From: Wallemia ichthyophaga EXF-994 | Lineage: Eukaryota; Fungi; Basidiomycota | Assembly: GCF_000400465.1 (NCBI RefSeq) | Contig: NW_008806275.1 | Location: 678,156 to 710,155 of the forward strand | Length of the DNA: 32,000 nt | Direction of reading: 5' to 3' | Shown here: piece after piece, positions 7,097 through 25,137 of the stretch | Layout of the letters: the number at the start of each line of letters is the position of its first letter | How positions within the stretch are numbered: the stretch's first letter is position 1 | The notes under the pieces: model-generated | Database searches by the model: none | What the model was told of the DNA's origin: nothing | What the model saw: the letters and a program-made list of their open reading frames with translations, nothing else | Position numbers and translations under genes: made by a program

Positions 7097-7248
7097 AAAA
7101 ATTTGCAAAGATGTGAAGAAACGGATGAATTACATAGTAAACAGTATTAATAACAATTGAGACATAGCTGAAACAGGTAATGCTAAGCAAGAAAACTGAA
7201 AAATCTATCATGTGTGACTTAAGTTCGTTGAGAGTAACACACATCCTA

Positions 7249-8635
7249 TCAACCACTCTCAAAGAGATACTCTGCAAAGGAGACAGTTGGCTGCTTCCAC
7301 GGATGAGTTGTAGCAGGCTTAGGTGTGAGCTTGCGAGGAGTACTTGTTCTGCTTATGCTTGGGGATGTGCGTTCGACATCACTCTCTTCTGTATCGCTAT
7401 CTCTCACAGCTCTGCTCGATCTATCTGGGGTTGATGCACTCCTGCTTATTCTATCCCTTGGAGAACTTTCATCATCGCTAATGAGTTTGTCTTGTATGTT
7501 GACCCTGTTATGTAAATCATCGGTAATATCGGCCCAAGCAGCGCTCGCGCTTGCGTCTCTATGATCAGCAACATTCTCCTCTGCCTCTGAAGGAGTCATG
7601 TTGAGATCGCTTGCTGTATCACTAGCCGCCTCACTAGCAACCTCGCTGGCCACCTCACTAGCGCTATCGACTTCACTCGTTGGTGGCGTGTCCAAATCGT
7701 CATGTTTGATTTGCTTGTCGAGGGGCAAGCGTGGTTTGAGGAGGTGCGTAACTCTCTCACCATCGCTGTTGGACTTGGAGAAGCTAACAACGCCCCACCA
7801 ACGCGCTACACAGTGTACGACGAATCTTTCGAATTTCTCCGGAATAAGCCAAACGAGACTGCTTGAAGAGCGTGACAACTCAATAATGCTGGGTAGTTCA
7901 ATGCACTCCTCGTTATCCTCGTGGAAGTGGCCATTAGCGTGGCAAGTGGTTGTGGCATCGATTACTCTACCACGACTATGGATGTTATCGTCCGGATTAA
8001 CAACCACATGGCTGTTGACGCCAAGTATCCTAAAGCTTACTGTGAATACCAATAGCCTGCTAGACAGTAGCCACCCACCAATGACGTATTTCAGACTCAG
8101 TTGCCTGTACAACGAATCTGGCCCTGGCGGAACCAGTTCCTCTTGGAGCCAGGGTTTTTCTGATGCCTTTCAAGCTTACGTAGAAGGAGCCTATAGTGAG
8201 TGTCAGTTGAGCCCCTTTCCAACTTAGCTATGTCACACCTTCGTCACCTGCAGCAGGCGATTTACGCTGTGATCGGCCGCGGGCGGTTGTGGACGAAGGA
8301 ACAGGCTGATTGCGAGGCAAGAGCGAAGGTGGGAGAGGAGAAGGGAAGGTAGATTTGTAGGAGTGCACTGGCGCAGATGCATCATCCCTTTCAGCGCCTT
8401 TAGCTCTGCTGGTGAGGGTAGAATCGCGCTCTTGGATGTATCTACGCCGCTTTCCGATATAACCGTCACTCTTTGATTTGTGTGTGTTGTTGATGTACTC
8501 GCCACGGAGCTGTGTAAGCTTTGGATTTGTGAGAATGGCGGGGAAGCTGGATTGCTGGTAATGGATTTGGCTTGTCTGCTCAGTGACAGCTGTGATTGGC
8601 TGCGATTTAATCCTTATATCGTGACTATCTCCCAT
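7249..8635 (-). CDS. R3H-associated N-terminal domain protein with acidic/Ser-rich tail, 2 introns
   Basis: Spliced segments FYVSLKGIRK...FVVQATESEIRHW and LVWLIPEKFERFVVHCVARWWGVVSFSK...RVTHLLKP resemble fungal R3H-assoc/R3HDM4-like proteins. Both introns are canonical GT-AG. Confidence 0.7.
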
Positions 8636-8700: not shown

Positions 8701-11218
8701 ATGAACTACATTTACCAACTCACTCAAGCTGCCACTACGGCTGTTCTTGAGAAATCTGGCAGGAATCTCCCTTTCTCACTCGGTGCTGCTACCGGCAAGC
8801 ATTCCATCTGGGATACCTTTGAGGGCGAGAAAAGAGACGACAGCTCCCCGCTTACTATATTCGTCTATAACAAACACGCAAATCAGAGATATACCCAGCT
8901 CGCTACAAACGCAATGAGGAAGCTGCGTACACTCAGGCACCCACAAATACTCAAATTCATCGACGCTATAGAAACTGACTCAATGATATACATTGCAACT
9001 GAGAGAGCCACGCCGCTTTCGAAATTCCTCCCTTCCGATGACACGATTTGGCTCACTTGGGGGCTACAGAGTGTATCACAGGCTTTGGCATTCTTGCACA
9101 CTCTCACACACTCTATACATGGCTCTGTGTCTAGCGATAGCGTTTTCGTATCCCACTCCGGCGAATGGAAGCTTGGCGGGTTCGAGTTGTGTACAACGCA
9201 GACTGAGCTGAGTAATGGTATTCTGGAGAGCAACTACGACTCGAAACTGGCTGCACCCGAAGCCAGGCAGGGCTTTGATGCCATTCCAACCAACCCTGTT
9301 TCCAGCCTCGACTCATTCAGCTTGGCACTGCTTATCAGCCAGCTATACAACCCCACAAAACCACTCCCCGTAGACTTAACAGCCGCGCCTGCACCAAATA
9401 GCAGAGGTATGATACCAACCAGTCTATTCAACTCGTACCGCAAACTCCTCAACCCATCACCGAAGAATAGAATCTCAGTAGACACTTTCTTGCACCTTGG
9501 AAAGAACACACAGGAAACTCAAAACGGAGCGTTCTTCACGCAAAACCCTCTGATCGAGTTGTGCCAAGGATTGGAAATGTTCAGCCTTATGAGACAGACG
9601 GAAAGGGTAGTATTCCTCAAAAACCTATCGCACCTCCTCAACTACGATAACTCTAATGAGGGTATACTAGGTGAGAATAGAGTGTCAATACCAAACTCGC
9701 TAGCAATACACAGAATACTACCAACATTAGTCCATTCGGTTGAGTACATGACAGCGGGTGATTCAGCCCCTTCACTCGTACCTCTGATTGTTAGAATAGG
9801 TATGCGTCTAAGCACGGAAGACGAGCGCAGCACAGCCATCAGCAAGCCTCTGCTAAGGCTATGGATGAGTCCAGACCGAGGAACGCGCATGGCGCTACTC
9901 GAAGATCTCGAGCGGTATATAGATGTGCTATCGAACAAGATAGTAATCAACGAGCTATGGCCACATCTGCTTACTGGATTCAACGATACCGCTGCTGTTA
10001 TTAGGGAAGCTACCATCAAAGCCGTCCCGCTCCTACTGCCGAAACTCTCCGACAGAATCATCAACAATGAGCTCCTCAAGCAGCTAGCTAAGGCACAGCT
10101 AGACCCTGAGCCTAGCATCCGCACCAACACGTGCATCTTGATCGGTAAACTTACTCCCAAATTGTCCCTCACGACGCGCAAGAAGGTCCTAGTTGCAGCG
10201 TGTGCACGCGCCATGAAGGACAGCTTCCCGCCAGCCAGAGCAGCCGGTCTGCGCACGTTGCTAGCTACAGTAGATGACCAAGAAGAAACAGACTTAGCGA
10301 CGAGGGTGTTGCCGACGATATGTCCCTGCCTTCTCGACAAGGAGAAGAGCGTTCGCGATCAGGCGTTTGAAGTACTCAGGAATATCGTTGACAGAATCGA
10401 AAATATAGCCTCTAAGATGCCAGAAACGGTTGTTAAGCCAGACGAAGAAATTGATTACAGCTACAGCGGCACTGCTGGTAAATCCTTTTTAGGCGACGAT
10501 CAGCTGGGTAGTGCTGCAACAGCGATAGCCGGCTGGGCATTCGGAACATCGACGACGAGCAAAAAGGTAGGGTTAATGAAGCTTACGACAAAGTAAATCA
10601 CTCATCACACCCCAGCTCGAAGCCAGCGAGGCTACTACAGCGATGTCGTCAGCAGGTCCAGAAGCTGCGGCGAGCATGCCTTCTCCAATGCTACCAACGC
10701 AATCTACACCCCAGCTCGATAAACCGATGTCGTCTGGAGGAATGAAACTGGGCAGCAACAAACCCTCACCCTCTCCATTGCCTTTCGAGGACGACGAAGG
10801 CGGGTGGGGAGATCTCGAAGAACCTAAGAGCATACCAAGCATACCCGAGATGCATGCGTCAAATACATCTGTATCTGCTCCAACCAGACAGGCTGGTAGT
10901 GCACCAGCAGCACCTTCACTTCAGCCGATAAAACCAACTAACACTGGCAGCATGGCCAGACCAGGGTTAGGTGCACCATCACCAGCGCTGAATCGAGCTA
11001 ATACCACCAATAACGCACCAACTGAAAGCCACATCAGTGTCCAGAAATCACACTCTTTGCATACACTCTCCCCATCCCCATCCAGCCCATCAACACCACT
11101 CAGTAAAGAAGAAAAAGCGCAAGATCTCGCTCGCAAGAGAGAAGAGAGAGCACAGAAGATCGCCCAAATCAAGGCTGCGAAGGCTGCTGCAACTGCCAAC
11201 ACTGGTACACTTATCTGA
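8701..11218 (+). CDS. CEX1: SCY1-like pseudokinase with HEAT repeats (Cex1/SCYL1), intron 10567-10615
   Basis: KLRTLRHPQILKFID, WKLGGFE (no DFG), HEAT region GFNDTAAVIREATIK / IRTNTCILIGK / DSFPPARAAG, and a disordered tail ending in a coiled-coil. Confidence 0.9.
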
Positions 11219-11354: not shown

Positions 11355-14300
11355 CTAGTCCTGCTGGTAGCCTCCTCTACCCCTGTAGCCTCCTCTGCCT
11401 CTAAATCCACCTCTACCTCTATTACCACCTCTATTACCACCTCTGCCACCGGCACTACCATGGTTCTCTGAAGCGTGCGTGATTGGTATGTTGTGATCAC
11501 CAAACTGCAAAGATGTCGGATGCTGCTGCTGCTGCTGACTGAGAAGATGAGGTGGAGGTGCTCTGTTGCTACCGGCTGGGTTCGCCATATGAGGTGGAGG
11601 TGCTCTGTTTCTTGGTAGAGTTGGTTGAGCTGGTTGAGCTGACACAGAAGACCCAGAGAAAGCAGGTCTGTCATAATTAAGTGGCGGTGGACGCGGTCTA
11701 AAAGTAGGCTGCTGTGGTTGCTGTAGTTGCTGCATTTGCTGCATCTGTTGATGTGGAGGCAGAGGACGACCGCTAAACTTGGGCTGTCTGCCAACAGCAT
11801 TCGGACCACTGGCACCGCCACCCAAACTCAATGCGTCAGCGAGATTTTTCTGATGAGAAGATGGCTGCTGTTGATTGAAACGTCCTTTGTGAGCACCATT
11901 ATAGCCAGATTTCGGTCCTGGTGAGAAGTGTTCCTGCGGTGCTGAAGTCGCTGGCTTCACATAGCGATCACCACCCAATGCCGGACGCGGTCCAATCTGT
12001 CTCTTGAATGGTGGAGCGGGCTTTTCATACTGCGCATTCTCGGCCATTCCATCCATGCTAGCCACATACTGCTCATTACTAAGGTTGAGCACGGCATATG
12101 AAGGTATCGTCGCACCCCTGTAAGCGCTACATTTACCGCCAAGCGTCGTGCCACTCATGAAGGGCTCATCCATAACCACATCGATTAGATTGTTTGATGC
12201 TATTCCAACGACTGTGCCTCTCGACGTCAAGTTCACCTTGCCGTGGTCGGCGACATACACCACTCTGTCACAAAGTCTGAACTGCTGGTTGATAATACGC
12301 GTAGATGCGTGGTTTGGCTTGAGGACAGCGTGGCGAGGAACGTTCTTCACTATCGCCTTCTTTGGCTCGACTTTCTTACTCGCATCAGCTAAATCCTCGG
12401 AAAGCTTCTCGACTTGGGCTATAGACTCGGTTGACATTTGGTTGACGAATAGAGAGACTGTCTCGAATGTATTGACCTTCTTGGCCTTGAGCCACTTTTG
12501 TATTTCTGCCAAACGCACAGCTGCTTCATCTTGATCTTGCCATATTTCGTCGTAGTTGTTGACACCCTTGTTTCTATCAAGACGCATAAATACTTCGGGG
12601 AAATTTTGCTTTTATGATTATAAGAAAATGACTCATGAAACCAGTAAAACTTACTTTATACTCTCCAACAAGTTCAGAGGCTTTATCGGAATACTCCCAA
12701 CCAACATGGTTCTTTTGCGTATAACCCGCCACCTTCTCACCCTTAGCTTCAAACTTGAGATTAAGACCAATGTTGATGTTTTTACCATCAGGTCCTACAA
12801 TAGTCAATGCAGAAGTGATCTTTGACAAAGTGAGTGATTGAATACGATGGAGCTGTGCCACTTTTGGTGAGATGTAGTAATTCTCGCTGTTCGAAGCTTT
12901 GCCAATCGCGTTAAATTTAGGTCTTTCAGTAAGATTAGGCATGAGAACAAGACGTAGTGTCATAGTGTTGCTCTTGTTGTCGGCTGCTTCGACTGTAGCG
13001 GGCGAACCGTATTTCACGCCTAAGAAGAACAACTGCGTACCGACAGAGAACTCCTCTTCAAGTGGTGGCGCGGCTTGCTCCAAATAACGCTCATCTTCAG
13101 ACTCTACTTCAAGCACGGTAGTCTGTAGCGGATACTGTTGCTCATTCTCTTCGTAGTCTTTGACGAGTTCGCCTGAGAGTTTTCTCTTGAGACCTATGCA
13201 ATTGAGTTAGAATGAAATAGTTAACTACCACTAAACCCACCCTTCAAAGGACGCGCATGAACCATGATATCAACCACACCGATACGTACAGCGCGGCTCT
13301 TGGAGTAAGTGGTCTCCAGACGTTCGCTGTCTCTAGCAAACTTTGCTGATAAGCTAGCTTCCTCTTGTACGATATTTCCCTCAAGAGTGTATTTGGCATT
13401 CTCGTCGCTAATACCGGCAACGAACGCTTCCTGCAAGAAAGGCCAATTGATGAAGACCCTCTTACCCAGCAAGGACCCAGCGACATCCTTAGCAGTGTGA
13501 TTCTCATACTTGTTGACGGTCACAATCACGATAGAGTCCTTTCTCGATGGCTGGTTGAACACCATAACGCCATGCTTGTGGAGCAGCGACTCGAACTCTA
13601 GATTGTAGAGGGTGGGAAATCCAGCAAGTGCTTGTTTACCACTACGTGCGTGTGGCACCAAACCCTGTCTGAAAGCACCTTCGCCGAGAGCTGGAAGAGT
13701 ATAGACACACTCATTACACTTATCGTTGACTATGGTGGTGAACTTTTCATGTGTCGATTCGTACTTCTGGCCCTCTCTGGTGCCATCATACTTGAAAATT
13801 GTTGCATCACCAAACGAGTTGCGGAGTCTCTCTTCTGGGGTCAAGGCTTGCTCCACTCTTCTCATAGTACCGAGTAAGAGTTGTTCATCGATGAAGGGAA
13901 TCTTGATGATAGCCTCCCATTCCTGCTTCTTGCCATTCATATCCTTTTCGAATTTCTCAGGGTAGAACTTGATAATTGGTGATGTCTCCTCTGTCATCAA
14001 GTCTCTGTATACAAGAGGCACCAACTCTTTAGAAGCAGATGGGAGAACACCCATGAGCTGTTCAAACGGCTTAAACGGAAAGCCTTTTTCATATTCGCAC
14101 TTAATATCTCCCATATCAACGATATCTGAGATTTTTGGTGCGTAGTAGTAGTCGTAAAACCAGCCCCAAGAAACGCAGCCCTCGTAGTAGTACTTAATAA
14201 CCCATTGAATACCCTCGACATAGCGCTGTACCAGTCGTCTAACTTGTTCAGGTTGCGATGTCTTATTGAAACCCAGCTTGCTGCTGTAGTACTCTTCCTT

Positions 14301-16160
14301 CCAACCCTTGAATCGACCTTCGAAGCTTCTATCAATGGCATTTTCTTGTTCTTCGTAGATTTCTTCTGGATCGTCAACAACCTTGCGTGGATTCAAAGCT
14401 GTGAAAGATTTCATGAAGTTGGCACTGAAACCGCTGACTTGGAGATTCTCCATTTCATCCTCGAGAGCATCTGGATTGTTGAGGTCGTTTTCAATTTCGC
14501 TATCAGAGGAGTTGTCATCAAGCGCCATGCCGATTCTTTGTGCTGCTGATAGACCTTCGCGTTTGGTAGCTGATACAGGGACTCTGACCACAGCTTTGGG
14601 TACGCCGTCTGCGGCAAAGTGATCATATTCAAGGACGAGGCTGAAATTTTCAGAAATTGCATGCAGGTATTCCCTTTCAGATTCGCCAAGTGGGAGTGGC
14701 AACTCCAAGAAGCCACCCTTCTGTGAGAGGGATCCAGAGGTGATACTTTGAGTGAGCATTTCATGCAATTTAGCCTGCTTAGTGGTCATGGTGGTCTTGC
14801 CCTCTTCAAGGACTAGCGGAGTGTGTTGACTAACTGGACCATTAGCCATATCAGTGTCAACCATTTCATCCTTGAACACGGTCTTTTCAAAGTCGTGAAG
14901 ATGGTTCATGACGAGTTGCAAACGGTTGAAGTTGATGTTTCCAAGTACATTGATGTATCCACCGGCGTCTTTCAATATCTTCTTGTAAGATGAGAACAAG
15001 AGCTCAAGTGCGCCGTCATTAATGTGAAAACCAGGCAAATGCGGAAGGAAATCATTACCGACGAGAATAGCGAGGAGGATAAAGTCATCGATGATTCTCT
15101 CCAAATCATAGTCGAATGGGAGTGTGTGCCTAATTTCCTTAAACTCAAGGTCCAAGTATTCACGGAAGAGCGAGAGGTGCATCAAGTAAAACTTCTGATG
15201 TTCAAGGCCTTCACTCTTCTTTTTTTTCTGTGGACCGAAAGTAACTTCCTCTCTAAGCAGACAGAAGTGAGGCTCGTGGGAGAGAAGGCCGAGCATGATG
15301 AGATCAGCGTCTAAACCGTAAAGACAGTGTCTCATGTTAGGGTTGTAATGAGGCTGAGCCTTAGTAAGACGAATGAATTCCTGGATCTTGTGCTCTCCTT
15401 CACCAGGAACTTCGTGGCCAGATAAGATAACGTCAATGCCCTGCCATAAAGCATCCTCGGAGATTTTCTTGTGAACGAAATATTTGAGTTGCTGGGAGAG
15501 CTTAGCCATGAAAGTGGTTCCTGGAGTGATACAGTTGCTGTTGAATGCGTCATCAATGTTTTCACCCAAACGTTCAGCTTTTGTAAGGTTTTCAGCGTGT
15601 TCTTGAGCAGTTCTAAATCGACGGCTACGTTGCTGGTTCATCTTGGCACGAGGAGCAACACCGTCAACGGCCATGAAGAATGTCTTGCGAGGTCTAATTT
15701 TCGAGAAGAGAAATTCAATGTACTAATTGTTGTTGTTAAAACATCTACCATATCTAATATATCCAAACTAACCTTGAATATATTCTGTACCATATCAGTC
15801 TCATTAACCTTGCGTACGGATCCTTGGCCTGTATTTGCAGCGCAAGTGTGGATGATACCATTCATATCCAAGTATAAGCAGTCTGTGTGGTTGGTTAGAA
15901 TCCAATTCGATATCGAGTGGCACACCTACCAAACTCAGGAATACGATTATCTTCAACCAGTTGACTTGTAAGCGGGTATCTTTCACTGTGGATGCTGTCA
16001 GCGTCATATAAATCACGCATATTCCTCTACTCACGATACATATCTGAAGAACTGAGAGATATCAATAAGTATTATACGTATTGGAGAGATGAACGTACTT
16101 TTGGAATACCTGAGATTTGCTTGTTAGTAATGCGAATTTAAATTATTTAGACTCACCCAT
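11355..16160 (-). CDS. XRN1: 5'-3' exoribonuclease 1, 7 introns
   Basis: Spliced start MGIPKFFRYVSERYP. Motifs LYLDMNGIIH, DGVAPRAKMNQQRSRRF, PGEGEHKI, YGLDADLIMLGL, GNDFLP, KPFEQLMGVLP. C-terminal KOW/SH3-like region and Q/P/RGG-rich tail distinguish it from Xrn2. Confidence 0.95.
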
Positions 16161-16366
16161 TTTAGATTTACTATGTGATGATGGTTGTCGTCAAATGAAT
16201 TGAGAAGATACGGTAATCAACGATATCAACAAAATGCATTAATCCTCCCAGAGGTTTGCGTTTACAAGAAATAAAGTTAAGAATCGTGAAAACAAATTAG
16301 ACCAAGTCAAAGATCCCTCTTTACTTGGACTGTTTCACTTAGCACTTGGCACTTTGCACCTTGCAA

Positions 16367-17642
16367 TTAGTGATGGAATCTGCGTCTGTTGTGCTGATCC
16401 CTCTTAACTTTCATTCTCTTCATTTTGTCATCGTCTACGAGTCTTCTCTGTACTTGTCCACGGCAAGATACGAATTCATCTTGACACGAGTACGCAGTAC
16501 CTGGAACCCAGTCGTTGTTACATTGCGTCCATTGTGATTCACAGTCTTGTTCGGCAGTTGCTTGTTGGCCAGAGTTGTTTTTCTGGTTTGCATTGTTATT
16601 CTGCTGCCCTGAGCCTTTGTCTTGTTGAGCAGAGCCATCATTTTCGTCGGCATCGTCATAATCATTTGAATTGTTGTTGGACCCATCATTAGAGCCATTG
16701 TCAGAGTTTCCGTTGCCTTGGTTACCCTGATCTACCTGTTGAGCATGAACATTTGCAGAAGATTGAGCAGGAGCGAACTTTTTGAAGTTAGATTGTGTGG
16801 CGCTTGATGTAGAGTTATCAGAGTTATCAGAACCATCTGAAGTACCATCACCACCACCACCGGAAGCAGCACCCTGTCCAACAGTGATAAGCTCAGGACC
16901 TGGGAATTGGTATGCTGAATCAGACTGAACGTTATAGATATCACTACCACTCGAAGCTAAACCAGCATCAGACCAGCTGTAAGTACCTGGGAAAGTAGCC
17001 GTTGCGTCGTCGCTGTAGGTGTTTGAACCATCACCTGTGATAGTCCATGACACGCAGCGAGGGTAGTACTGTGGCCTTGAAGCATGAAGTGAAATTATCT
17101 CAGTTCTCATGAGGTAGTCACCTGTTTTTAAATGCTGTGAGACAATCTTCTAGATGAAAAATCTTCTTTTGTCACTCACCAGCTGCGAGATCCTCTGGGA
17201 TAGTCACTTGGTATCCGCCACCATTCATCAATGAAGCTTGCTTCCACTGTCCGTTTTCGAAACCAACTTGATCGATCTTGAACCATTTAGCTGAATCAGC
17301 GTTCATGTTGGCACAGTCGGTGGTACATTGTGCCATATAAGTGATTATTGGACCTGTATTGTGTGGCCACTGCTGCTGAGCTGTCTCTTCCCACCAGAGA
17401 GTCATAGTGGACCCAGCACCAATCGTAGCAACACTATTTGGTGATGAGTTTGGACCACAAAACATATCCGATGAGTATGGGTCCTTGATTGGGTTGATAC
17501 CAGAGGTCCACTCTGGTGCATTTTGTGAGGACTGATTAGGGTCAGGACCGTTGAAGCCTTGACCATTCACGTCTATGTAAGAAACCACACCGTGTGCGAG
17601 TGCTGAGCTAGCTAAAGAGAGTGCGACGAATGCGTTAACCAT
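16367..17642 (-). CDS. Secreted AA9 lytic polysaccharide monooxygenase, paralog 1 (1 intron)
   Basis: Signal peptide ending ALA, then His1 (HGVV); WPHNTGP, WFKIDQ, YLMRTEIISLH, QYYPRC. Followed by an N/D/S/Q linker, a 4-Cys module and a basic His-tipped tail. Confidence 0.92.
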
Positions 17643-18629
17643 TTTTACAAGACCGGCTTGTTTGAACGACTTTTGAAGAACTTGGGTTGTTGAGATGACC
17701 TAAGAGAGAACAATGACATTTACGAATTTTTCTTATTACAGGGCAGGAACGGTAAAAAACCGATGACCAGGGTAATAGCGCATGTACATACGATCGGTCA
17801 AATTGATAACAGCAATTGGTAAATTCTCATATAATCCTGCACACTTCCTACTATGCTAGTTATCTAGTTGCCATTCCCCACTTCAAATTTGGTTACAGGG
17901 CTTGCCCGCTATTCAAGACCGGCCAACCTCCACATCGAAGAGGCGGGAAACTGCTCACTGCCTCAATATATGTTTGTAAAAAGACCCATTCAAAGATCAC
18001 ACTTGGAAAAGTGAGACTATGCGGACAGAGAGACACACAGTGGTGATGTCACCGATAGAAACTTTCGTGTGCGTTTGACTTTTAATTTGTATCCAAACAT
18101 AGATACTAAAAATAGTACAGTCAGCTTCACTGCGCGCGTCTCAAGACAGCGGATGTTGAGAAGACCCTGGTATTTTGAAAAGTTCCGAGATTCGCTAAAT
18201 GAGCGCGTTTAAAGGGTGAGTTTAAGAATGTGAGATAAGAGTACTACATTCAAGAGCGGATAACGTAATTGTATCGATTGCTTATTCACGGCTTCCCTGT
18301 AAGCACGGCGCAGACCTTCTAGTCGCACGTTCCTGAAACAGTCTTAAACGAGACGGCATATACATGAATAAGACAGTTATCCAATCAAACTTAAAATCCA
18401 AAAACATCTCACCAAGTCACAAATCAAACAATACTGAAATCCAAGACGCCATATTCATGAGAAGTAATAAAGATATAGATGCCTTATCCTGAAGGTATCT
18501 AGAAACGAAGGAAATATCTACACGATATATAAAGCGGGTAAAAAACGAAAGGTTAAAGCAAAGCATCAGAAGAATTCCATTCTCCGATCCGTTTTGGGTG
18601 AATGAACATAACCGTCTCTAAAAAGCAAT

Positions 18630-19752
18630 CTAGTGGTGGCGACGAGCGTGTTGAGCGTGCTGGTTGTGCATGTCTCTCTTGACTCTCTTGGTCGTCATTT
18701 TGGCGTTAGAGTTCAATCTTCTTTGGACAGATTGGCCACGACATTGTGCCCATTGGTCTTTGCAGGTGAAGTCAGTGCCTGGGACGTAGTCCTTGTTGCA
18801 TTGAGTCCACTTAGACTCGCACTCATCCTCATTTGCTTGAGTTGCACACGATGGGTTTGAGGACGCGGTGTTTGAGTCGTCGTTGCAAGTTGATGACTCG
18901 TCTTCCTCATCAGCACCGTCATCTTGCTTATCACTGTCTGTGGATTGGGAGTCGTCGTTGCTTCTATAGGAAGCTTGACCACCTTGACCGACGGTAACAA
19001 GTGGTGGACCAGGGAACTGGTATTGTTCGTCAGAGTGTACGTTGTAGATACCACCACCGCTAATAGATAAGCCAGGGTCAGACCAGCTGTAAGTACCAGG
19101 GAAGCTACCCCAAGCGTCGTTACTGTAAGTGTTGCTGCCACCGCTACCGTAGATATGGAATGAAACACAAGATGGGTAGTATTGTGGCTTTTGTGCGTGA
19201 AGGGAGATAATCTCAGTTCTCATGAGGTAGTCGCCTGTAGTAATCAACTGTGAGTCAATGTACTTTGAAAAGAAAAACACACCCACCCTCTTCGAGATCC
19301 CATGGGATGGTGATGGTGTAACCAGCGCTGTTCATCAAAGAAGCTTGCTTCCATTGGCCATTCTCGAAACCTTTTTGATCAATCTTGAACCAGTTTGCCG
19401 AGTCAGCGTTCATGGTCGAACAGTCACCGCTCCAGCAGCGGGCCAAGTAGGTGATAATTGGACCCGTGTTATGTGGCCATTGTGAGTATTGCGTCTCCTC
19501 CCAGTAGATGTTCATGGAAGAGCCAGCTCCGATGTAGCCTTTGCCATTGGCGTAAGCGTTTGGACCGCAGAACATGTCTGGTGAGTATGGGTCCTTGATA
19601 GGGTTGATACCAGCGGTCCATTCGGCAGCGCCAGGAGACGCTTGGTTTGGCTCTGGACCATTGAAGCCTTGGCCTTCAACGTTAATGTACGACACGATAC
19701 CGTGAGCGAGTGCAGAGCTAGCTAACGAGAGTGCGGCAACTGTCTTAAACAT
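18630..19752 (-). CDS. Secreted AA9 lytic polysaccharide monooxygenase, paralog 2 (1 intron)
   Basis: MFKTVAALSLASSALA then HGIV; WPHNTGP, WFKIDQ, YLMRTEIISLH, QYYPSC. Intron at the same codon and phase as paralog 1 and the same C-terminal architecture. Confidence 0.92.
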
Positions 19753-19820
19753 TTTCGTTCGTAAGTAAGGACCGGCCTTGAATTTGGATCTAAAGTACAA
19801 GAAGAAAGAACGCACGTCCC

Positions 19821-19826
19821 TTTATA
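19821..19826 (-). promoter_or_regulatory. Putative TATA box of AA9 paralog 2
   Basis: TATAAA on the minus strand about 70 nt upstream of ATG 19752. Confidence 0.45.
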
Positions 19827-20577
19827 CGTAAAATTTGTAGGGTTACACTGGCGGACGGCACTAAACGTCACTTAGTAGTTTTAAGCGTGTGAGGACAAGC
19901 ACCGCTATAATAAACGCGTATATAAATAAGGTTGACTTACTTTTGGGATAATTCGTGGAGTGCCTATTGAAGGGGGCTAGCTTTACGTGACATGTTCGAG
20001 ACCTGGCGATGACGAGGAGACGTTCTCTAACATCTATTTTTGTTTTCAAGGGCAGCTCAGAGCACAAACGAGTGCGTTATGGGAAATTTGTGCATTTCAT
20101 ACATGTCATCAGTTGAAGTGGTGTTTTGAGGCTGTGATTGGTATATACGCACGTGCTTAGAAGCCATGTAGCTAGAGCCACGAGTATATTTGCATTTAAG
20201 CGTGTTTTGAAACTATTCCACACAGCTTCATTGGTGGATGTAGACAGCTGTGCGCTGTACCAGAGACCTTATTAAGCGGACGATAAGAGCTTCGAAAGGG
20301 AGCGACGAGTAGAGCGCGCAATTTATCGCCCCCACTGACACCCGCAAAGTCAAAATCACTTGCCCACAATTGATGACTCAAGAAGGCTGCGCCGGAGACT
20401 GAAAACTTTAACAGTCGTCTAGCGTCAAAAGAGAAAAGAGAGCACAGACGAAGTTCTCAGTCTTTTTGTAGTACCACTCACCTGAAATTGCAAAATTAAT
20501 TTTAAAATCTCTGACCAGCAGTTACTCTGATCCAAGATTTTGGATTTTCCCGACCACGACCTTGGAAATTGGATAAA

Positions 20578-22302
20578 ATGAGCATGAACAGTAAAGATAT
20601 AGATAAATTAGAAGCGTCGTCTTCAGAAGAGGAGGAGGAGATAAAGGAGAAATATGATAGCCACAGTCGGCCGTCATCTTCCAACAGCACGACGCCGGCG
20701 AATCCAGCGAGTGCGAATCCTACAAAGTCGCACAATCACGGCAGCACATCGCCAACGACGCCACGCCTGCCGAGCAGCTTAGCAGCGAAAATGGCAGCGA
20801 TGGTGAATAGAGGCAGAGTATCGAAAGAAAGAGACACTGGCAGCACGAGCAGCGGTGGTAATGTGAGCAACATGCAATCGAAAGGTGGCCAGCCAGTGGG
20901 AGCTGGGCTTCGGAGCATGCGTCAAGCGCCCCTCCCGCCGAACCAGCTGCGTGAGAAGATGGAAGCCATGTCAATGAATGACAAGGTGGAAGTGGAGAGG
21001 TCATCTCCACAGCAGAAAACAGCAGCAACGCCCTCACCCCCTGGTGGACTCGCAGCGAGACGGGGTATGAAACTTAGCATGAACAACAACCCCGCGCCAC
21101 CAGCAGGCAACACACCCAAAAAGCGTGGCCCGCCTGGAAAGCTGAACCTCAGCAACGATGACGGCAAGCACGATACCCCTTTCTCCAAATTCTCAGACAT
21201 CGTTGACCCTTCTGGTAAACTCAATTTCGGAGAAGGGAAGGCAGTGCTGCATGCATCAGGAGTCAACTTTTCCACCGGGCACTCATTTAATATTAAAATC
21301 GAAGATCTAGAACTGCAGGAGGAGCTTGGCAGGGGAGCGTACGGAGGGGTGCGCAAAGCCAAGCACAGATCGACAGGCGTGGTGATGGCAATTAAGGAGA
21401 TACAATTAGAACTAGACAAGAGTAAACTCGCAGGTATTGCTATGGAATTGGATATCCTTCATCGCGCAGTCAAGCCCCAGATAGTTGAGTTTTACGGTGC
21501 ATTCTTCGTCGAAGGCTGTATTTTTTACTGCATGGAGTTCATGGATGCGGGATCGCTCGATAAACTCTACTCGCCTACATTCGGTGTACCCGAGGATATC
21601 CTAGCGTTTGTGACGAAGAATCTGATCATTGGATTACAATTCCTCAAAGATGATCTGCAGATTATACACAGAGGTGGGTGTGTGTTGATTTGGTTGACTG
21701 GATTCTAACACTTCTTCCAGACGTCAAACCCACAAACGTGCTAATCAACAGACGCGGTAAAGTCAAGATATGTGATTTCGGTGTATCGGGACAACTCGAG
21801 AAGTCACTAGCCAAGACCAACATAGGATGTCAATCGTACATGGCAGTGAGTGGGAGATATACGCATGTTTACACCTTACTAACAGAATACATAGCCAGAA
21901 AGAATACAGTCACCAGAAAGTGGTGTGCACGCCTCGTTTTACACTGTAAGCTCCGACGTTTGGAGTCTAGGATTAACAATGGTGGAGTGTTCGCGCGGTG
22001 AATACCCATACTCTTTCTCGAATGTCCTCGCGCAACTGCAGGAGATAGTCAAAGGACCAGCGCCCGAACTGCCAGCTACATACTCGGAAACGGCAAAGGA
22101 CTTTATACACTCGACGCTGCGCAAGGACCCGAACGCGCGACCACAATACCAGGAATTACTGGAACATCCCTTCCTTGCATATGACAAAGAGCCAGATGTG
22201 TTTAGGTGGATTGAAGACGCACTGAGGGCTAAGAACGGCGGCAACTTGCCAGATTCGATACCAGAGTCTGAACCTAGTCATCATTATGAGAGGTCGCATT
22301 AG
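20578..22302 (+). CDS. PBS2: HOG-pathway MAP kinase kinase (Pbs2/Wis1), 2 introns
   Basis: [66 protein letters not shown] (Pbs2-type activation loop). First true ATG at 20578; the ORF-track start at 20569 is TTG. Confidence 0.93.
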
Positions 22303-22358
22303 AGTGGTATTAATTGACATGTGTAATTTTGATTCTATTTCTTTTATGTTGTGGGTTG

Positions 22359-23204
22359 ATGAATGGCGTTGATGGGGTGATCGACCGGTGGACCGAGTAT
22401 CAGTGGAAAATAAGAGAAAGAGCTGTGTATGAGGATGAGGATGGGGATAATAATGAGGGCAATTATAATGCTACAGATACAAACGAATTCAGTCCCGTCG
22501 TGCATCACCTACCACAGCGCGCACTCGATGTAAAAACAGAAATAGTTGGAGGAATAGACATAACACCCGCCTCGTCATCGCATGACGAATGCATAGTAAC
22601 GATAGTTGTTCTATCCGTCCACGCCCAGCGCGTGCTCTACACGTATCACGAGGCGCACGCAATCAGCGAACCGTACGTTCCTTCGTATCTAGCGATGCGG
22701 GAGAGCGGGCCAATACGCAGGGCGTACACCAACTTCACAGCGCACACGCTCAATCCGATGCACACACCCGCCGTGTGGCTGATAGACGGCAATGGCAGGC
22801 TTCACGAGAGGGAAGCAGGACTAGCTACGCAGGTTGGCGTCGAGCTCGGTATAAGGACGGTGGGGGTGACTAAGAATTACTATCCAATGACCCATTTCCA
22901 CGGTGCACTCAGCCATCCCAAGCTGTTTAAAGGGCTGGCTCAACAACTACTCAATAGGCGCGGCGATTGGATTGGGTTGCCTGGCGCGTCTGAGAATGCT
23001 TCTGCTAACACCTACATCGGCGCTGCTCTCCTCACCGGACGCAATGCTACCAATCCAGTCTTCGTGTCAGCGGGTCATAGATGTTCATTGCAATTCGCCC
23101 TAAGTGTCACATACGCTCTCTCTAAACACCGCATTCCTTTGCCAATTGCCCTTGCTGATAAGGCGGGCAGGCAGTATATGCGAGAACACAGCTACCACTG
23201 CTAA
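22359..23204 (+). CDS. ENDOV: Endonuclease V (inosine-specific nuclease), intronless
   Basis: VGGIDI, PYVPSYLAMRE, IDGNGRLH..GLA, GVTKN, PVFVSAGH, RIP.P...AD. The catalytic D/Y/E/D/D positions are recognisable. Likely ATG 22359. Confidence 0.88.
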   Translation: MNGVDGVIDRWTEYQWKIRERAVYEDEDGDNNEGNYNATDTNEFSPVVHHLPQRALDVKTEIVGGIDITPASSSHDECIVTIVVLSVHAQRVLYTYHEAHAISEPYVPSYLAMRESGPIRRAYTNFTAHTLNPMHTPAVWLIDGNGRLHEREAGLATQVGVELGIRTVGVTKNYYPMTHFHGALSHPKLFKGLAQQLLNRRGDWIGLPGASENASANTYIGAALLTGRNATNPVFVSAGHRCSLQFALSVTYALSKHRIPLPIALADKAGRQYMREHSYHC

Positions 23205-23359
23205 TATTGATAAAAAATCATGCTATGAATTTGTATGTGAATGACATGTGTAATGATAATATGAAATATATAAGAAATTGAAAGTTGAGTTAGTTAGTTT
23301 CTCACTTTGAAAGTAGGTTCGATGAAATCCAGCTTGTTGCTATATCCACTGCGATGCTC

Positions 23360-25137
23360 TTACTTGGCAAGCTTGGGACCAGCGTTGATGACAGCCTGGG
23401 AAAGACCTTGGGCATACTTGTCGAAAGCACCGTTAAAGAGACCGCCAAGCTTGTTAATCTCCTTGTCAAGTGCAGCAGTGTCCTTCCATGCTTTCGATGG
23501 GTTGAGAAGCTCTGAAGGCACGCCTTCGATGCTCTTTGGAATCTGGAGGTTGAAGATGGAGAAAGGCTCGAATTCACTCTTGCCCAAGCTGCCGTCGTGG
23601 ATGGCGTTGATGATAGCACGAGTGTACTTCAATGGACACCTCTTGCCAACACCAAACTTACCACCAACCCAACCAGTGTTGATCAACCAGCAGTTAGTGT
23701 TGGCTTTGTTCATCCTCTCTGCCAACATCTTGGCATATCTACCTGGATGCAATACGATGAATGGCTGACCGTAGCAAGTGGAGAATGTTGGTGATGGCTC
23801 CAAAATACCATCCTCAGTTCCAGGCGTCTTGGAGGTGTAACCTGCAATAAAGTGGTATTGGGCTTGCTCTTCGGTGAGTTTGCTGACTGGTGGTAAAACA
23901 CCATAAGCATCACAAGTCAACATGATGATATTTGATGGTTGATTTCTACTCAGGCAAGGTATTTTGGCGTTCTCAATGTACTCGATTGGATAAGCGCATC
24001 TAGTGTTCTCGGTGATCATGACATCTTCATAGTTTGGTTCGCGTGTACGAGAATCATAGACGACGTTTTCTAAAACAGAGCCAAATTTGATAGCGTTGTA
24101 GATTTCAGGCTCCTTCTCTTTAGAGAGACCGATAGTCTTGGCGTAACAGCCACCTTCGATGTTGAAGACACCGTTATCAGCCCAAACGTGTTCATCGTCA
24201 CCGATAAGTTTGCGTTGGGGGTCTGCAGAGAGAGTGGTCTTGCCTGTACCACTCAAACCGAAGAAGAGAGTGACGTCACCTTTCTCACCCTCGTTGGCGG
24301 AAGAGTGCAAAGACAATTGACCAAATTTGACTGGTTGGAGATAGTGCATGACAGAGAAGATACCCTTCTTCATTTCACCAGCGTATTCGGTACCTAGGAT
24401 AACCATTTCCATACGCTTGAAGTTAATTTCAACCGAGGTGGCGGAAGTCATACCGGCAGTGAATCTGTTGGCTGGGAATTGACCAGCGTTGTAGATGGTA
24501 AAGTCAGGTTCGCCCCAATTGTCCAATTCCTCTTTGGATGGTCTGATAAGCATATTCTGCATGAAGAGAGCATGGTATGCTCTAGCACAGATGACTCTAA
24601 CTTTGATTCTGTACTTTGGATCCCAGCCAGCGAAAGCGTCAACGACGTAAACATCATCGCGTGTGTTGAGGTAATCGATGGCACTGAGTGGGAGTATGAG
24701 ATCATAGAAGAATGATAAAGACGTCTACTCACCGTTCGCGATTAATTTCAAAAACATGCTCAGGCATTCTGATATTCACAGGGCCCCACCAGATATCGTC
24801 CATAGAGGTCTCTTCAAAGACGATACGCTTGTCGCGGGGACTGCGGCCAGTCTTCTTACCAGAGAAGTTGATGAGAGCGCCGTTGGAGGAAATAACAGCG
24901 CCTTCTTTCTGGACAGCGTCTTCGTAGAGCTGAGCGACGGCAGAGTTACGCTGAGGGTGGGGTAAGATGGGTGAAATGGACGGGTAGCCATCAACTCACC
25001 TTCACATGAATTCTATCCACTTCAAAACCAGCGTCTGAGAGAGAATGCAATTCATTTGGGAGAGCTGTGATTGGTTAGAATGGACTAGCCTGTATGAATC
25101 CCAACACACTAAGAAATTGCTGCTTATTTAAAGACAT
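23360..25137 (-). CDS. PCK1: Phosphoenolpyruvate carboxykinase (ATP), 3 introns; alternative in-frame start at 25260
   Basis: [65 protein letters not shown]. The exact N-terminus is uncertain. Confidence 0.93.

What the first reader, a model, noticed from the sequence alone, without database searches (positions are those of the whole stretch)
16367..16450. AA9 LPMO tail may be a Kex2-released ATCUN copper-binding peptide (paralog 1)
The C-terminus reads ...C-RGQVQRR-LVDDDKMKRMKV-KR-DQHNRRRFHH*. Kex2 cleaves secreted proteins after KR/RR (established). Cleavage after the last KR exposes H2N-Asp-Gln-His. An N-terminal Xaa-Xaa-His is the ATCUN Cu(II)/Ni(II) motif, as in albumin DAH and histatin-5 DSH (established). 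Paralog 2 has a very different linker yet keeps QRRL, KR-D-x-H-N and terminal RR(x)HH, which points to selection. Hypothesis: the gene is a small polyprotein delivering a copper enzyme plus its own Cu-binding peptide. The peptide could load or buffer Cu, make H2O2 co-substrate by redox cycling, or act as a histatin-like antimicrobial. Cu-binding His-containing C-terminal motifs (X283) have been reported on some basidiomycete AA9s; I cannot tell whether this is the same element.
Basis: partly seen in the sequence, partly recalled or inferred. Interest (0 to 1): 0.72.

Follow-up and report, generated by a model that had tools for sequence, protein, structure and literature searches.

The report
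Basic histidine tail on Wallemia LPMOs
Two neighbouring copper enzymes (AA9 LPMOs) of the salt-loving fungus Wallemia ichthyophaga end in a conserved arginine/histidine-rich tail of a known type (X283-like) whose layout would also fit a protease-released copper-binding peptide, an idea the sequences allow but cannot prove.

Summary
Window 16367-16450 (minus strand) encodes the last 27 residues and stop of a two-exon AA9 LPMO. The protein is identical to W. ichthyophaga EXF-994 EOR04231.1. A tandem paralog lies 1 kb away.

Both proteins have a signal peptide, an AA9 domain, an acidic disordered linker, a 4-Cys helical hairpin and a 31-36 residue basic tail. In seven tails from four Wallemia taxa, [KR]-x-[KR]-R then [D/S/H]-x-His and a C-terminal His never change. 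Synonymous sites there are saturated, so the tail is under purifying selection.

The conserved His lines up with the His of the known X283-type motif (RxHAR / RHxxR[VIM]MRR) that ends many fungal LPMO disordered regions. The sister Wallemia clade has the His at +5 (Asn in one). Agaricomycete and ascomycete tails lack the KR-x-x-H spacing. One shuffled tail gives [KR]R-x-x-H 19-30% of the time.

A related AA14 tail was recently shown to bind Cu through His, to resemble histatin-5 and to be antifungal, while still attached. No data address kexin cleavage.

ATCUN chemistry argues against the copper-loading and H2O2-making roles. Copper sequestration remains possible.

Verdict: a new variant of a known tail type. 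The Kex2/ATCUN reading is plausible (about 0.2) and testable.

The parts
16367..17642 (-). LPMO1 gene (AA9 LPMO, 405 aa): exon 1 17180-17642, intron 17122-17179, exon 2 16367-17121 including the stop codon
   Evidence: ORFs and splice junction. Pfam AA9 E 3.7e-49. Product identical to EOR04231.1 of W. ichthyophaga EXF-994.
17595..17642 (-). Signal peptide (aa 1-16, MVNAFVALSLASSALA). Its removal would expose His17 as the N-terminal His of the copper histidine brace.
   Evidence: Read from the sequence. H17 is invariant in a 19-sequence AA9 alignment. Cleavage itself is inferred.
16871..17594 (-). AA9 catalytic domain (aa 17-238, interrupted by the intron) with His17, His94 and Gln172-x-Tyr174
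   Evidence: Pfam. pLDDT above 90. Closest solved structure 5NNS, E 8.8e-35, with WPH and PQ[FY]YP aligned.
16544..16870 (-). Acidic, N/D/S/G/Q-rich disordered linker (aa 239-347)
   Evidence: pLDDT below 50 over residues 239-339. 12% identity to the paralog. Indels between strains.
16463..16543 (-). Four-cysteine module C-x6-C-x11-C-x6-C (aa 348-374), predicted helix-loop-helix
   Evidence: The four Cys are invariant in 15 homologs. AlphaFold2 gives helices 2-14 and 23-60 of the isolated module (pLDDT 76) and 341-358 / 367-388 in the full-length model.
16370..16462 (-). Basic Arg/His-rich tail (aa 375-405, RGQVQRRLVDDDKMKRMKVKRDQHNRRRFHH), X283-like
   Evidence: 12 K+R in 31 residues, against 11 in the other 374. 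Purifying selection. Aligns with RH[AN]R-type tails of other AA9s.
16400..16411 (-). K392-V-K-R395: candidate kexin (Kex2) site, P4-P1
   Evidence: [KR]-x-[KR]-R is conserved in 6 of 7 clade tails. W. hederae position 1 has A at the first position (RKRAAKR). The terminal [KR]R pair is in 7 of 7. Lies in a low-pLDDT segment. Cleavage is not shown.
16391..16399 (-). D396-Q-H398: would be an N-terminal Xaa-Xaa-His (ATCUN) triad if cleavage occurs after R395
   Evidence: His is invariant in 7 of 7. Position 1 is D/S/H and position 2 is Q/M/I/A/E.
16370..16375 (-). C-terminal His404-His405. The last residue is His in all seven clade tails and in several Agaricomycete tails.
16442..16450 (-). Q379-R-R381 of the conserved VQ[KR]RL motif, a second possible dibasic site. 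The finding's interval starts here.
   Evidence: V-Q-[KR]-R-L is invariant in 7 of 7.
18630..19752 (-). LPMO2 gene (tandem paralog, 356 aa): exon 1 19287-19752, intron 19235-19286, exon 2 18630-19234
   Evidence: Pfam AA9 E 1.4e-45. Identical to EOR04232.1.
18633..18740 (-). LPMO2 basic tail (aa 321-356), with R339-V-K-R342 at 18675-18686 and D343-M-H345 at 18666-18674

Best explanation
The segment is the C-terminal end of an AA9 LPMO of Wallemia ichthyophaga. [quoted passage not shown] Here the motif follows a four-cysteine helical hairpin rather than a single Cys.

Shown: the gene, the domain order, the homology of the tail to other AA9 tails, and purifying selection on the tail.

Inferred: the tail works mainly as an appendage of the secreted enzyme. 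It is a polycationic, His-bearing patch that binds Cu(II) through imidazoles, as was measured for the X283-like tail of PcoAA14A. It may also contact anionic surfaces or the enzyme's own acidic linker.

Whether kexin also cuts at R/K-x-K-R, which would turn D-x-H into an ATCUN site, is left open. I treat that as the main rival, not as established.

Of the 0.45 confidence, the identity part (an X283-type tail under selection) is about 0.8. The mechanism part (His-based copper binding while attached) is about 0.4.
For: Gene and family.

Architecture: AA9 domain pLDDT above 90, linker below 50, two helices over the Cys module, tail below 50.

Selection: 7 of 7 conservation of VQ[KR]RL, [KR]R, x-x-H and the C-terminal H. 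The synonymous difference proportion is at least 0.55 and the non-synonymous 0.08-0.37. Tail identity between paralogs is 61%, against 12% in the linker.

Homology to X283-type tails:
- Sister Wallemia clade ...KRSQQRHARMMRRKIRF.
- Agaricomycete AA9s ...RPRH[YIV]SR[VI]MRR..., and Moniliophthora ...LRAHNRSKFRR.
- LPMO1 has HNRRRF and LPMO2 has QHARR.
- X283 is defined in the literature as a positively charged RXHAR motif preceded by a conserved Cys at the end of AA9 disordered regions (PMC10990093; PMC8615602).

Mechanistic precedent: the PcoAA14A tail is described as 'reminiscent of X283'. It binds about 0.5 Cu per chain through its His residues (KD about 31 uM; shown by EPR and by NMR paramagnetic relaxation). 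It is likened to histatin-5 and is antifungal. All of this was measured on the intact region secreted from Pichia.
Against: - LPMO1 does not match RXHAR literally. It reads R-D-Q-H-N-R, with one extra residue and Asn for Ala.
- No experiment exists for any Wallemia LPMO.
- The invariant R/K-x-K-R just before D-x-H is a near-ideal kexin site in a probably exposed segment. The attached state may therefore not be what is secreted.
- In related clades the His is sometimes Asn (P0024 and many ascomycete tails), which weakens a general metal-binding role for that position.
- Ionic binding of the AA14 peptide was abolished at 1 M NaCl. W. ichthyophaga lives at higher salt (my own knowledge), so electrostatic roles are doubtful in this species.
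Confidence: 0.45

Rival explanations
1. In the late Golgi, kexin (Kex2) cuts after R395 (LPMO1) or R342 (LPMO2). Kex1 trims the enzyme's new C-terminus. A 10-14 residue peptide with a free N-terminal Asp-Xaa-His is co-secreted. It binds Cu(II) in the four-nitrogen ATCUN mode, and the C-terminal His-His may bind Cu(I). The chemically most plausible role is sequestering and redox-silencing free Cu(II) near the enzyme, or a histatin-like antifungal action. Copper loading and H2O2 production are less plausible.
For: - [KR]-x-[KR]-R then [D/S/H]-x-H holds in 6 of 7 clade members, and [KR]R then x-x-H in all 7, across four taxa and both paralog positions, with no indel between KR and His.
- The only substitutions are at the two positions ATCUN leaves free (D/S/H and Q/M/I/A/E). 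W. hederae even has RR-DAHN, the albumin-type triad.
- The segment has pLDDT below 50.
- KR/RR is the conserved fungal KEX2 site, and W. ichthyophaga is among the species rich in predicted KEX2-processed proteins (PMC6339444).
- Five of seven tails end in HH.
- Metal coordination, unlike ionic binding, would survive the high salt of this fungus's habitat (inference).
Against: - There is no evidence of cleavage anywhere.
- A related tail carrying KKKRK passes Pichia's secretory pathway intact.
- The His is inherited from the X283-type motif. The +3 spacing is absent in the sister Wallemia clade (+5, or Asn), in Lentinula (RR-HHS), in P0028 (KR-MH) and in other tails.
- [KR]R-x-x-H arises in 19-30% of shuffles of one tail.
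- ATCUN affinity (1e12-1e14 M-1) and its resistance to ascorbate argue against two of the three proposed roles.
- In W. hederae the Asp-Ala dipeptide is a typical STE13 substrate, and its removal would destroy the triad.
- Further RR/KR sites inside the would-be peptide could fragment it.
Confidence: 0.22
2. The tail is a purely electrostatic or structural appendage with no metal role. It would be a polycation that pairs with the protein's own strongly acidic linker, drives self-association, or tethers the enzyme to anionic cell-wall or substrate surfaces. The His residues would serve only as mildly basic or hydrogen-bonding residues.
For: - Charge is extremely segregated: 12 K+R in the 31-residue tail against 11 in the other 374 residues, and 21 D+E in the linker and module.
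- In CoAA9A the region around the Cys before X283 promotes a salt-sensitive dimerisation that improves cellulose binding.
- His and Asn interchange at the motif position in other clades.
- Position-2 orthologs carry a fifth, unpaired Cys.
Against: - In the window clade the His at +3 and the C-terminal His are invariant, while neighbouring basic residues drift.
- Ionic interactions are screened at molar NaCl, which is the normal habitat of this species.
- LPMO1 has an even number of Cys (four), so disulfide-mediated dimerisation is not expected for it.
Confidence: 0.2
3. The tail is a C-terminal pro-segment. It would help an extremely acidic, K/R-poor protein through folding and secretion, or keep it inactive, and would then be removed by kexin and discarded. 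The peptide itself would have no function.
For: - Three dibasic sites keep their positions in both Wallemia clades (QRR / GRR, xKR, xKR).
- The tail is predicted to be exposed.
- The body has almost no basic residues.
Against: - Residues downstream of the last dibasic site (x-x-H, the final H) are as conserved as the site itself. A discarded stub should not show this.
- Homologous tails elsewhere lack dibasic sites at the aligned position (Lentinula VSSR-AFAKH).
Confidence: 0.1
4. It is a chance resemblance in a neutral, compositionally biased tail.
For: Single-sequence shuffle frequencies are 19-30%. The dibasic excess is not significant.
Against: Positional conservation in 7 of 7 with saturated synonymous sites. 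The tail is identical between strains whose linkers differ by indels.
Confidence: 0.03

Closest known systems
X283 short linear motif of AA9 disordered C-terminal regions (CAZy; Lenfant 2017; Tamburrini 2021 PMC8615602 and 2024 PMC10990093)
   Same: - It sits at the extreme C-terminus of an AA9 after a disordered linker.
- It is a positively charged Arg/His patch with an H-[A/N]-R core.
- It is preceded by conserved cysteine.
- Tails of intermediate form link the two (Wallemia clade B RHARMMRR; Agaricomycete RPRHxSRVMRR).
   Different: - The literal RXHAR is not present in LPMO1 (R-D-Q-H-N-R).
- A four-Cys helical hairpin replaces the single dimerising Cys.
- A conserved R/K-x-K-R lies immediately upstream of the His, and the tail ends in His-His.
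- The host is a halophilic saprotroph, not a plant pathogen.
- The function of X283 itself is still unknown.
C-terminal tail of Pycnoporus coccineus AA14A (bioRxiv 10.1101/2025.11.04.686606)
   Same: - The last roughly 25 residues of an LPMO disordered region are rich in Arg, Lys and His and follow a Cys.
- Its authors call it reminiscent of X283 and of histatin-5.
- It binds copper through His and is antifungal.
   Different: - It belongs to a different LPMO family (AA14).
- Copper binding was measured on the uncleaved tail, with micromolar KD and 0.5 Cu per chain (a bridging, side-chain mode), not the picomolar N-terminal ATCUN mode.
- It has a single redox-active Cys.
- No sequence alignment with the Wallemia tail was possible here, because the peptide sequences are held only as images.
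ATCUN peptides (N-terminal Xaa-Xaa-His; serum albumin Asp-Ala-His, histatin-5 Asp-Ser-His)
   Same: - After a cut at KR/RR the peptides would start DQH, DMH/DIH, DAH, SEH or HEH.
- Position 2 is never Pro.
- Several also carry a bis-His pair, as histatin-5 does (the histatin detail is from my own knowledge).
   Different: - The free N-terminus is hypothetical.
- The known examples are animal proteins.
- No fungal enzyme-derived ATCUN peptide turned up in the literature searches.
KEX2-processed precursors (alpha-factor and KEX2-processed repeat proteins; PMC6339444)
   Same: It has a signal peptide and conserved KR/RR sites in an exposed region of a secreted protein, in a genus noted for many predicted KEX2-processed proteins.
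   Different: - There are no repeated peptide units.
- The bulk of the precursor is a folded enzyme.
- The definition used for KEX2-processed repeat proteins (internal repeats separated by KEX2 sites) is not met.

Membership tests
AA9 lytic polysaccharide monooxygenase | AA9 catalytic domain (Pfam PF03443) above the curated threshold | tested here: met
   167.9 bits (LPMO1) and 156.2 bits (LPMO2) against a cut-off of 27.8. Thirty solved AA9 structures match at E below 1e-10.
AA9 lytic polysaccharide monooxygenase | Histidine brace: His as the first residue after the signal peptide, plus a second His, plus the axial Tyr in H-x(n)-Q-x-Y | tested here: met
   ALA|H17-G. H17 is invariant and H94 nearly invariant in the 19-sequence alignment. 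WPH94NTGP and PQ172-Y-Y174-P align to 5NNS. The signal-peptide cleavage point is inferred.
AA9 lytic polysaccharide monooxygenase | Copper-dependent oxidative cleavage of a polysaccharide | not testable with these tools
   Needs an enzyme assay.
X283-type C-terminal motif of AA9 disordered regions | Located at the very C-terminus of a disordered extension of an AA9 | tested here: met
   Linker and tail have pLDDT below 50. The motif lies within the last 12 residues.
X283-type C-terminal motif of AA9 disordered regions | Consensus RXHAR within a positively charged patch | tested here: inconclusive
   LPMO1 reads R-D-Q-H-N-R (no literal match). LPMO2 has A-Q-H-A-R-R. Clade B has Q-R-H-A-R and Moniliophthora has R-A-H-N-R. 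CAZy's own X283 model was not available.
X283-type C-terminal motif of AA9 disordered regions | Conserved Cys preceding the motif | tested here: met
   The last Cys lies 31-36 residues upstream and is invariant. It is part of a four-Cys module rather than a lone Cys.
ATCUN Cu(II)/Ni(II) site | His at position 3 counted from the N-terminus, with position 2 not Pro | tested here: met
   This holds only conditionally, counting from the residue after [KR]R. The triads are DQH, DQH, HEH, DMH/DIH, DMH, DAH and SEH in 7 of 7.
ATCUN Cu(II)/Ni(II) site | Free alpha-amino group on residue 1 (requires proteolytic release) | not testable with these tools
   No proteomic data were found. It needs mass spectrometry.
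ATCUN Cu(II)/Ni(II) site | Square-planar four-nitrogen Cu(II) complex of very high affinity | not testable with these tools
   Needs UV-vis, EPR or competition titration on a synthetic peptide.
KEX2-processed secreted precursor | Secretory protein with KR/RR sites in an accessible context | tested here: met
   Signal peptide. K-V-K-R / R-V-K-R in a low-confidence, probably exposed segment. KR/RR as the fungal KEX2 site.
KEX2-processed secreted precursor | Repeated peptide units separated by KEX2 sites (the definition of KEX2-processed repeat proteins) | tested here: not met
   The inter-site segments are not repeats of one another.
KEX2-processed secreted precursor | Cleavage demonstrated | not testable with these tools
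   The only indirect datum is that the related PcoAA14A tail with KKKRK is recovered intact from Pichia.
X282 extension of AA9 | About 30 residues rich in Ser/Thr/Pro forming a 'belt', with two conserved aromatics; found in Agaricomycetes only | tested here: not met
   The description in PMC10354095 does not fit the Cys4-plus-basic tail.

The most novel reading that the evidence does not exclude
The Wallemia AA9 genes are bifunctional precursors. Kexin cuts at the conserved R/K-x-K-R and co-secretes, in a 1:1 ratio with the copper enzyme, a histatin-like peptide. That peptide would carry an N-terminal ATCUN site for Cu(II) and a C-terminal bis-His site for Cu(I). It would either silence stray copper, protecting the LPMO from runaway H2O2 chemistry, or act as a salt-proof, copper-armed antifungal. 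By extension, the widespread and still unexplained X283-type tails of fungal LPMOs would be processed peptides rather than appendages.
Probability: 0.2. Interest if true: 0.75.

Novelty: new variant of a known kind. Interest (0 to 1): 0.42.

Why it matters
What the disordered C-terminal tails of LPMOs do is an open and active question. Reported roles so far are dimerisation in Colletotrichum AA9s (2024) and copper binding plus antifungal activity in an AA14 (2025 preprint).

The Wallemia clade offers an unusually clean natural test case. It has a near-ideal kexin site directly in front of an invariant Xaa-Xaa-His, plus a terminal His-His. These sit in an obligate halophile, where purely ionic explanations are weak.

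If the tail is cleaved, LPMO genes would encode an enzyme plus a copper peptide. That would change how copper supply, free-copper side reactions and recombinant expression in Kex2-containing yeasts are interpreted.

If the tail is not cleaved, the clade still extends the X283-type tail in two ways. It adds a four-Cys hairpin module, and that module is also found on a protein that is not an LPMO.

Tried and rejected
- X282 as the identity of the tail: rejected. X282 is a Ser/Thr/Pro-rich belt of Agaricomycetes.
- GPI anchor or other hydrophobic C-terminal signal: rejected on the sequence, because the tail is strongly basic with no hydrophobic stretch.
- Antisense ORF 16346-16537 (+), 63 aa: mechanical only. 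The minus-strand reading is confirmed by homologs.
- Fold search of the Cys4-plus-tail model against the PDB: no match (best E 5.9).
- Profile of Cys4 plus tail against 1.84 billion representative proteins: only 8 hits. The module is rare, and no large sample of tails could be drawn that way.
- Third word-indexed homolog search with the same profile: no protein scored.
- Avoidance of dibasic sites in the mature enzyme, as indirect evidence for Kex2 pressure: uninformative. The body has so few K/R that zero sites are expected anyway.
- Enrichment of dibasic pairs in the tail: weak (P 0.05-0.34).
- My provisional idea that LPMO1 was missing from GenBank: wrong. It is EOR04231.1.
- Literature searches for ATCUN plus LPMO, Kex2 plus LPMO plus C-terminal, and Wallemia plus secretome: no report of processing of LPMO tails and no Wallemia peptidomics.
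- Whether CoAA9A keeps its tail in Pichia: cannot be read from the paper, because the protein was purified without a tag.
Full report
**What is at the coordinates.** Read on the minus strand, 16367-16450 encodes QRRLVDDDKMKRMKVKRDQHNRRRFHH followed by a stop. This is the end of exon 2 of a two-exon gene: exon 1 17642-17180, a 58-nt GTGAGT...ACAG intron, and exon 2 17121-16367. The 405-residue product matches Pfam AA9 at E 3.7e-49. It is identical, residue for residue, to GenBank EOR04231.1 / XP_009266448.1 of Wallemia ichthyophaga EXF-994. About 1 kb upstream on the same strand lies a tandem paralog (19752-18630, 356 aa). It matches AA9 at E 1.4e-45 and is identical to EOR04232.1. The window is therefore from this obligately halophilic basidiomycete.

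**Anatomy.** Both proteins share one domain order.
- A 16-residue signal peptide comes first. Its removal would expose His17.
- The AA9 domain follows, carrying His17, His94 and Gln172-x-Tyr174. It aligns to the Heterobasidion structure 5NNS at E 8.8e-35.
- Next is an acidic N/D/S/G/Q-rich linker.
- Then comes a C-x6-C-x11-C-x6-C module.
- A 31-36 residue tail ends the protein.

AlphaFold2 models the AA9 domain at pLDDT above 90. It leaves the linker (residues 239-339) and the last 20 residues below 50. It places two helices over the Cys module at pLDDT 65-74. The module plus tail modelled alone gives a helix-loop-long-helix at pLDDT 76, with no structural neighbour in the PDB.

Charge is strikingly segregated. 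LPMO1 has 11 Lys+Arg in its first 374 residues and 12 in the last 31. All KR/RR pairs are in the tail.

**Is the motif more than chance?** For one sequence it is not. Shuffling a tail of this composition yields [KR]R-x-x-H in 19-30% of trials. The number of dibasic pairs is only marginally above expectation. The evidence comes from comparison with relatives.

- **Synteny.** The order PEPCK, EndoV/kinase, AA9 (position 2), AA9 (position 1), XRN1 is shared with W. hederae, W. mellicola and an unnamed Wallemia in run SRR25399871. W. mellicola has only the position-2 gene.
- **The seven tails.**
  - W. ichthyophaga position 1 (LPMO1): KVKR-DQH
  - SRR25399871 position 1: RMKR-DQH
  - W. hederae position 1: AAKR-HEH
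  - W. ichthyophaga position 2 (LPMO2): RVKR-DMH
  - SRR25399871 position 2: RVKR-DMH
  - W. hederae position 2: RVRR-DAH
  - W. mellicola position 2: RVKR-SEH
- **What is invariant.** Every tail keeps the same columns: RGQ, VQ[KR]RL, the [KR]R pair, the His two residues later, and the final His. No indel falls between KR and His.
- **Selection.** Over these roughly 30 codons the proportion of synonymous differences is at least 0.55 in all 21 pairs. This is noisy but effectively saturated. Non-synonymous differences are 0.08-0.37.
- **Contrast with the linker.** The two window paralogs are 61% identical in the tail and 12% in the linker.
- **Strain variation.** Among W. ichthyophaga strains the only tail polymorphism is DMH to DIH, the position an ATCUN site leaves free.

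The tail is therefore under purifying selection.

**What the tail is related to.** A profile of module plus tail found only 8 proteins among 1.84 billion cluster representatives.
- Most hits are Wallemia AA9s.
- A few are Agaricomycete AA9s (Lentinula, and P0028).
- One protein, P0027, is not an AA9. It has a weak DPBB-like N-terminal domain (E 0.0019, below Pfam's threshold), a Ser/Thr linker and the same Cys4 module and tail.

The sister Wallemia clade ends ...MKR-SQQRHARMMRRKIRF. There the His is at +5 from KR, and P0024 has Asn instead. Agaricomycete AA9 tails retrieved with a full-length profile read C...RPRH[YIV]SR[VI]MRR......QRRHFKRFMRR......LRAHNRSKFRR and ...AKHLRRHHSGVSRLEFH. These share an R-H-x-x-R / H-[A/N]-R core with LPMO1 (HNRRRF) and LPMO2 (QHARR).

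The literature defines CAZy's X283 as exactly this sort of element. It is a positively charged 'RXHAR' short linear motif at the end of AA9 disordered C-terminal regions, preceded by a conserved Cys (PMC10990093; PMC8615602). X282, by contrast, is an unrelated Ser/Thr/Pro belt.

The Wallemia tail is best read as a clade-specific variant of the X283-type tail, although LPMO1 does not match RXHAR literally. The conserved His is therefore inherited from that motif. The KR-x-x-H spacing is specific to one Wallemia clade. In ascomycete tails (C-x-SKRKRRSA[N/H]KKRA...GLGLMRD) His and Asn interchange at the equivalent position.

**What is known about how such tails work.**
- In Colletotrichum AA9s the Cys before X283 forms an intermolecular disulfide. 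Dimerisation is helped by salt-sensitive charge interactions and improves cellulose binding. The authors purified those proteins without a tag, so the state of the extreme C-terminus is not reported.
- A 2025 preprint on P. coccineus AA14A describes a tail 'reminiscent of X283'. It binds about 0.5 Cu per chain through its His residues (KD about 31 uM; shown by EPR and by NMR paramagnetic relaxation). It resembles histatin-5 and damages basidiomycete spores, and that binding is abolished at 1 M NaCl.
- Those proteins were secreted from Pichia with a C-terminal His tag. The untagged region still bound a HisTrap column. So a tail containing KKKRK is not necessarily cut by Kex2.
- Neither paper mentions Kex2, cleavage or ATCUN. 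Searches for ATCUN plus LPMO and for Kex2 plus LPMO found no report of processing.

**Weighing the Kex2/ATCUN model.**

In favour:
- The site (R/K-x-K/R-R, with acidic or small P1') is close to the kexin/furin optimum (established knowledge). KR/RR is the conserved fungal KEX2 site (PMC6339444).
- It lies in a probably exposed segment.
- W. ichthyophaga is listed among species rich in predicted KEX2-processed proteins.
- The substitution pattern D/S/H - any - His is what ATCUN tolerates.
- Five of seven tails also end in His-His.
- Metal coordination would survive molar salt, where ionic functions would not (inference).

Against:
- There is no cleavage evidence.
- There is a precedent for an intact tail.
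- The spacing is lost in the nearest relatives.
- Further RR/KR sites lie inside the would-be peptide.
- In W. hederae an Asp-Ala dipeptide could be removed by STE13.

On function, ATCUN sites bind Cu(II) at 1e12-1e14 M-1 and resist ascorbate reduction (PMC9698028). LPMO copper sites are nanomolar (my own knowledge). A released peptide would therefore compete for copper rather than load the enzyme, and would suppress rather than generate H2O2. Sequestering stray copper or an antifungal role remain chemically reasonable.

**Verdict.**
- Shown: the gene, the architecture, selection on the tail, and kinship with X283-type tails.
- Inferred: any mechanism.
- Most likely (0.45 overall; about 0.8 for identity and about 0.4 for mechanism), the tail is an X283-type Arg/His appendage. 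It would bind copper through His side chains and act as a polycation while attached.
- The Kex2-released ATCUN peptide is a live rival at about 0.22.
- A metal-free electrostatic role is at about 0.2, a discarded pro-segment at about 0.1, and chance at about 0.03.
- It is a new variant of a known kind. It is interesting mainly because it gives the LPMO field a sharp, cheap experiment, which is C-terminal mass mapping plus peptide copper spectroscopy.

Noticed in passing
P0027, residues about 296-355: A secreted protein that is not an LPMO carries the same C-x6-C-x15-C-x6-C module and a basic tail (ERRRSLRRHIAHSRLESF) after a Ser/Thr linker. Its N-terminal domain is weakly DPBB/RlpA-like (E 0.0019, below Pfam's cut-off). 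The module plus tail may therefore be a mobile C-terminal cassette, not an AA9-only feature.
   Followed up: partly
L001 7908-13274 (W. hederae SPNW01000066.1): The deposited gene call fuses the position-1 AA9 with the neighbouring XRN1 exonuclease into one 1947-aa product with AA9 and XRN domains. ORFs show a normal AA9 ending ...MRKRAAKRHEHIRYHKQH at 9360. This is probably an annotation error.
   Followed up: partly
window 16544-16870 (-) versus P0001: The acidic linker of LPMO1 differs between W. ichthyophaga strains by short indels (GGGG versus GGGGGG; an extra DQGNQGN unit) and several substitutions. The 31-residue tail is identical.
   Followed up: no
P0002, P0004, P0008 (position-2 orthologs); window 18822-18890 (-) for LPMO2: Most clade members carry a fifth Cys 8-10 residues upstream of the Cys4 core (C-[ST]-S-Q-A-x-E-D-x-C). 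That gives an odd Cys count in three position-2 orthologs, so possibly a free or dimerising thiol as in CoAA9A and PcoAA14A. LPMO1 lacks it (4 Cys) and LPMO2 has two extra (6 Cys).
   Followed up: partly
P0029-P0101 (ascomycete AA9s): Dozens of ascomycete AA9s end in a lone Cys followed by a very dibasic tail, often C-A-S-K-R-K-R-R-S-A-[N/H]-K-K-R-A-x-K-x-G-L-G-L-M-R-D. The GLGLMRD end is conserved downstream of many potential kexin sites and is unexplained.
   Followed up: no
window 16367-17642 and 18630-19752 (-): Outside the tail these enzymes are extremely poor in basic residues: 11 K+R in 374 residues in LPMO1, and only 4 in 375 in the W. hederae ortholog P0002. This may be a halophile-style acidic proteome signature. 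The tail holds about half of all basic residues.
   Followed up: partly
window about 13221-24600; L001, L002, L004: The gene order XRN1, AA9, AA9, protein kinase, endonuclease V, PEPCK is conserved across Wallemia species. W. mellicola has lost, or never had, the AA9 next to XRN1.
   Followed up: partly
W. hederae P0002 tail (L001 about 7240-7271): The would-be peptide starts Asp-Ala-His-Asn. That is the same first three residues as serum albumin's copper site, but Asp-Ala is also a classic STE13 dipeptidyl-aminopeptidase substrate.
   Followed up: no
Clade tails, columns QRRL...KR-V-KR (window 16400-16450 and 18675-18725, -): The conserved RR-(10 residues)-KRxKR layout also resembles a bipartite nuclear-localisation signal. 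It is probably irrelevant for a secreted saprotroph enzyme, but is noted because LPMO tails have been discussed as effector-like.
   Followed up: no
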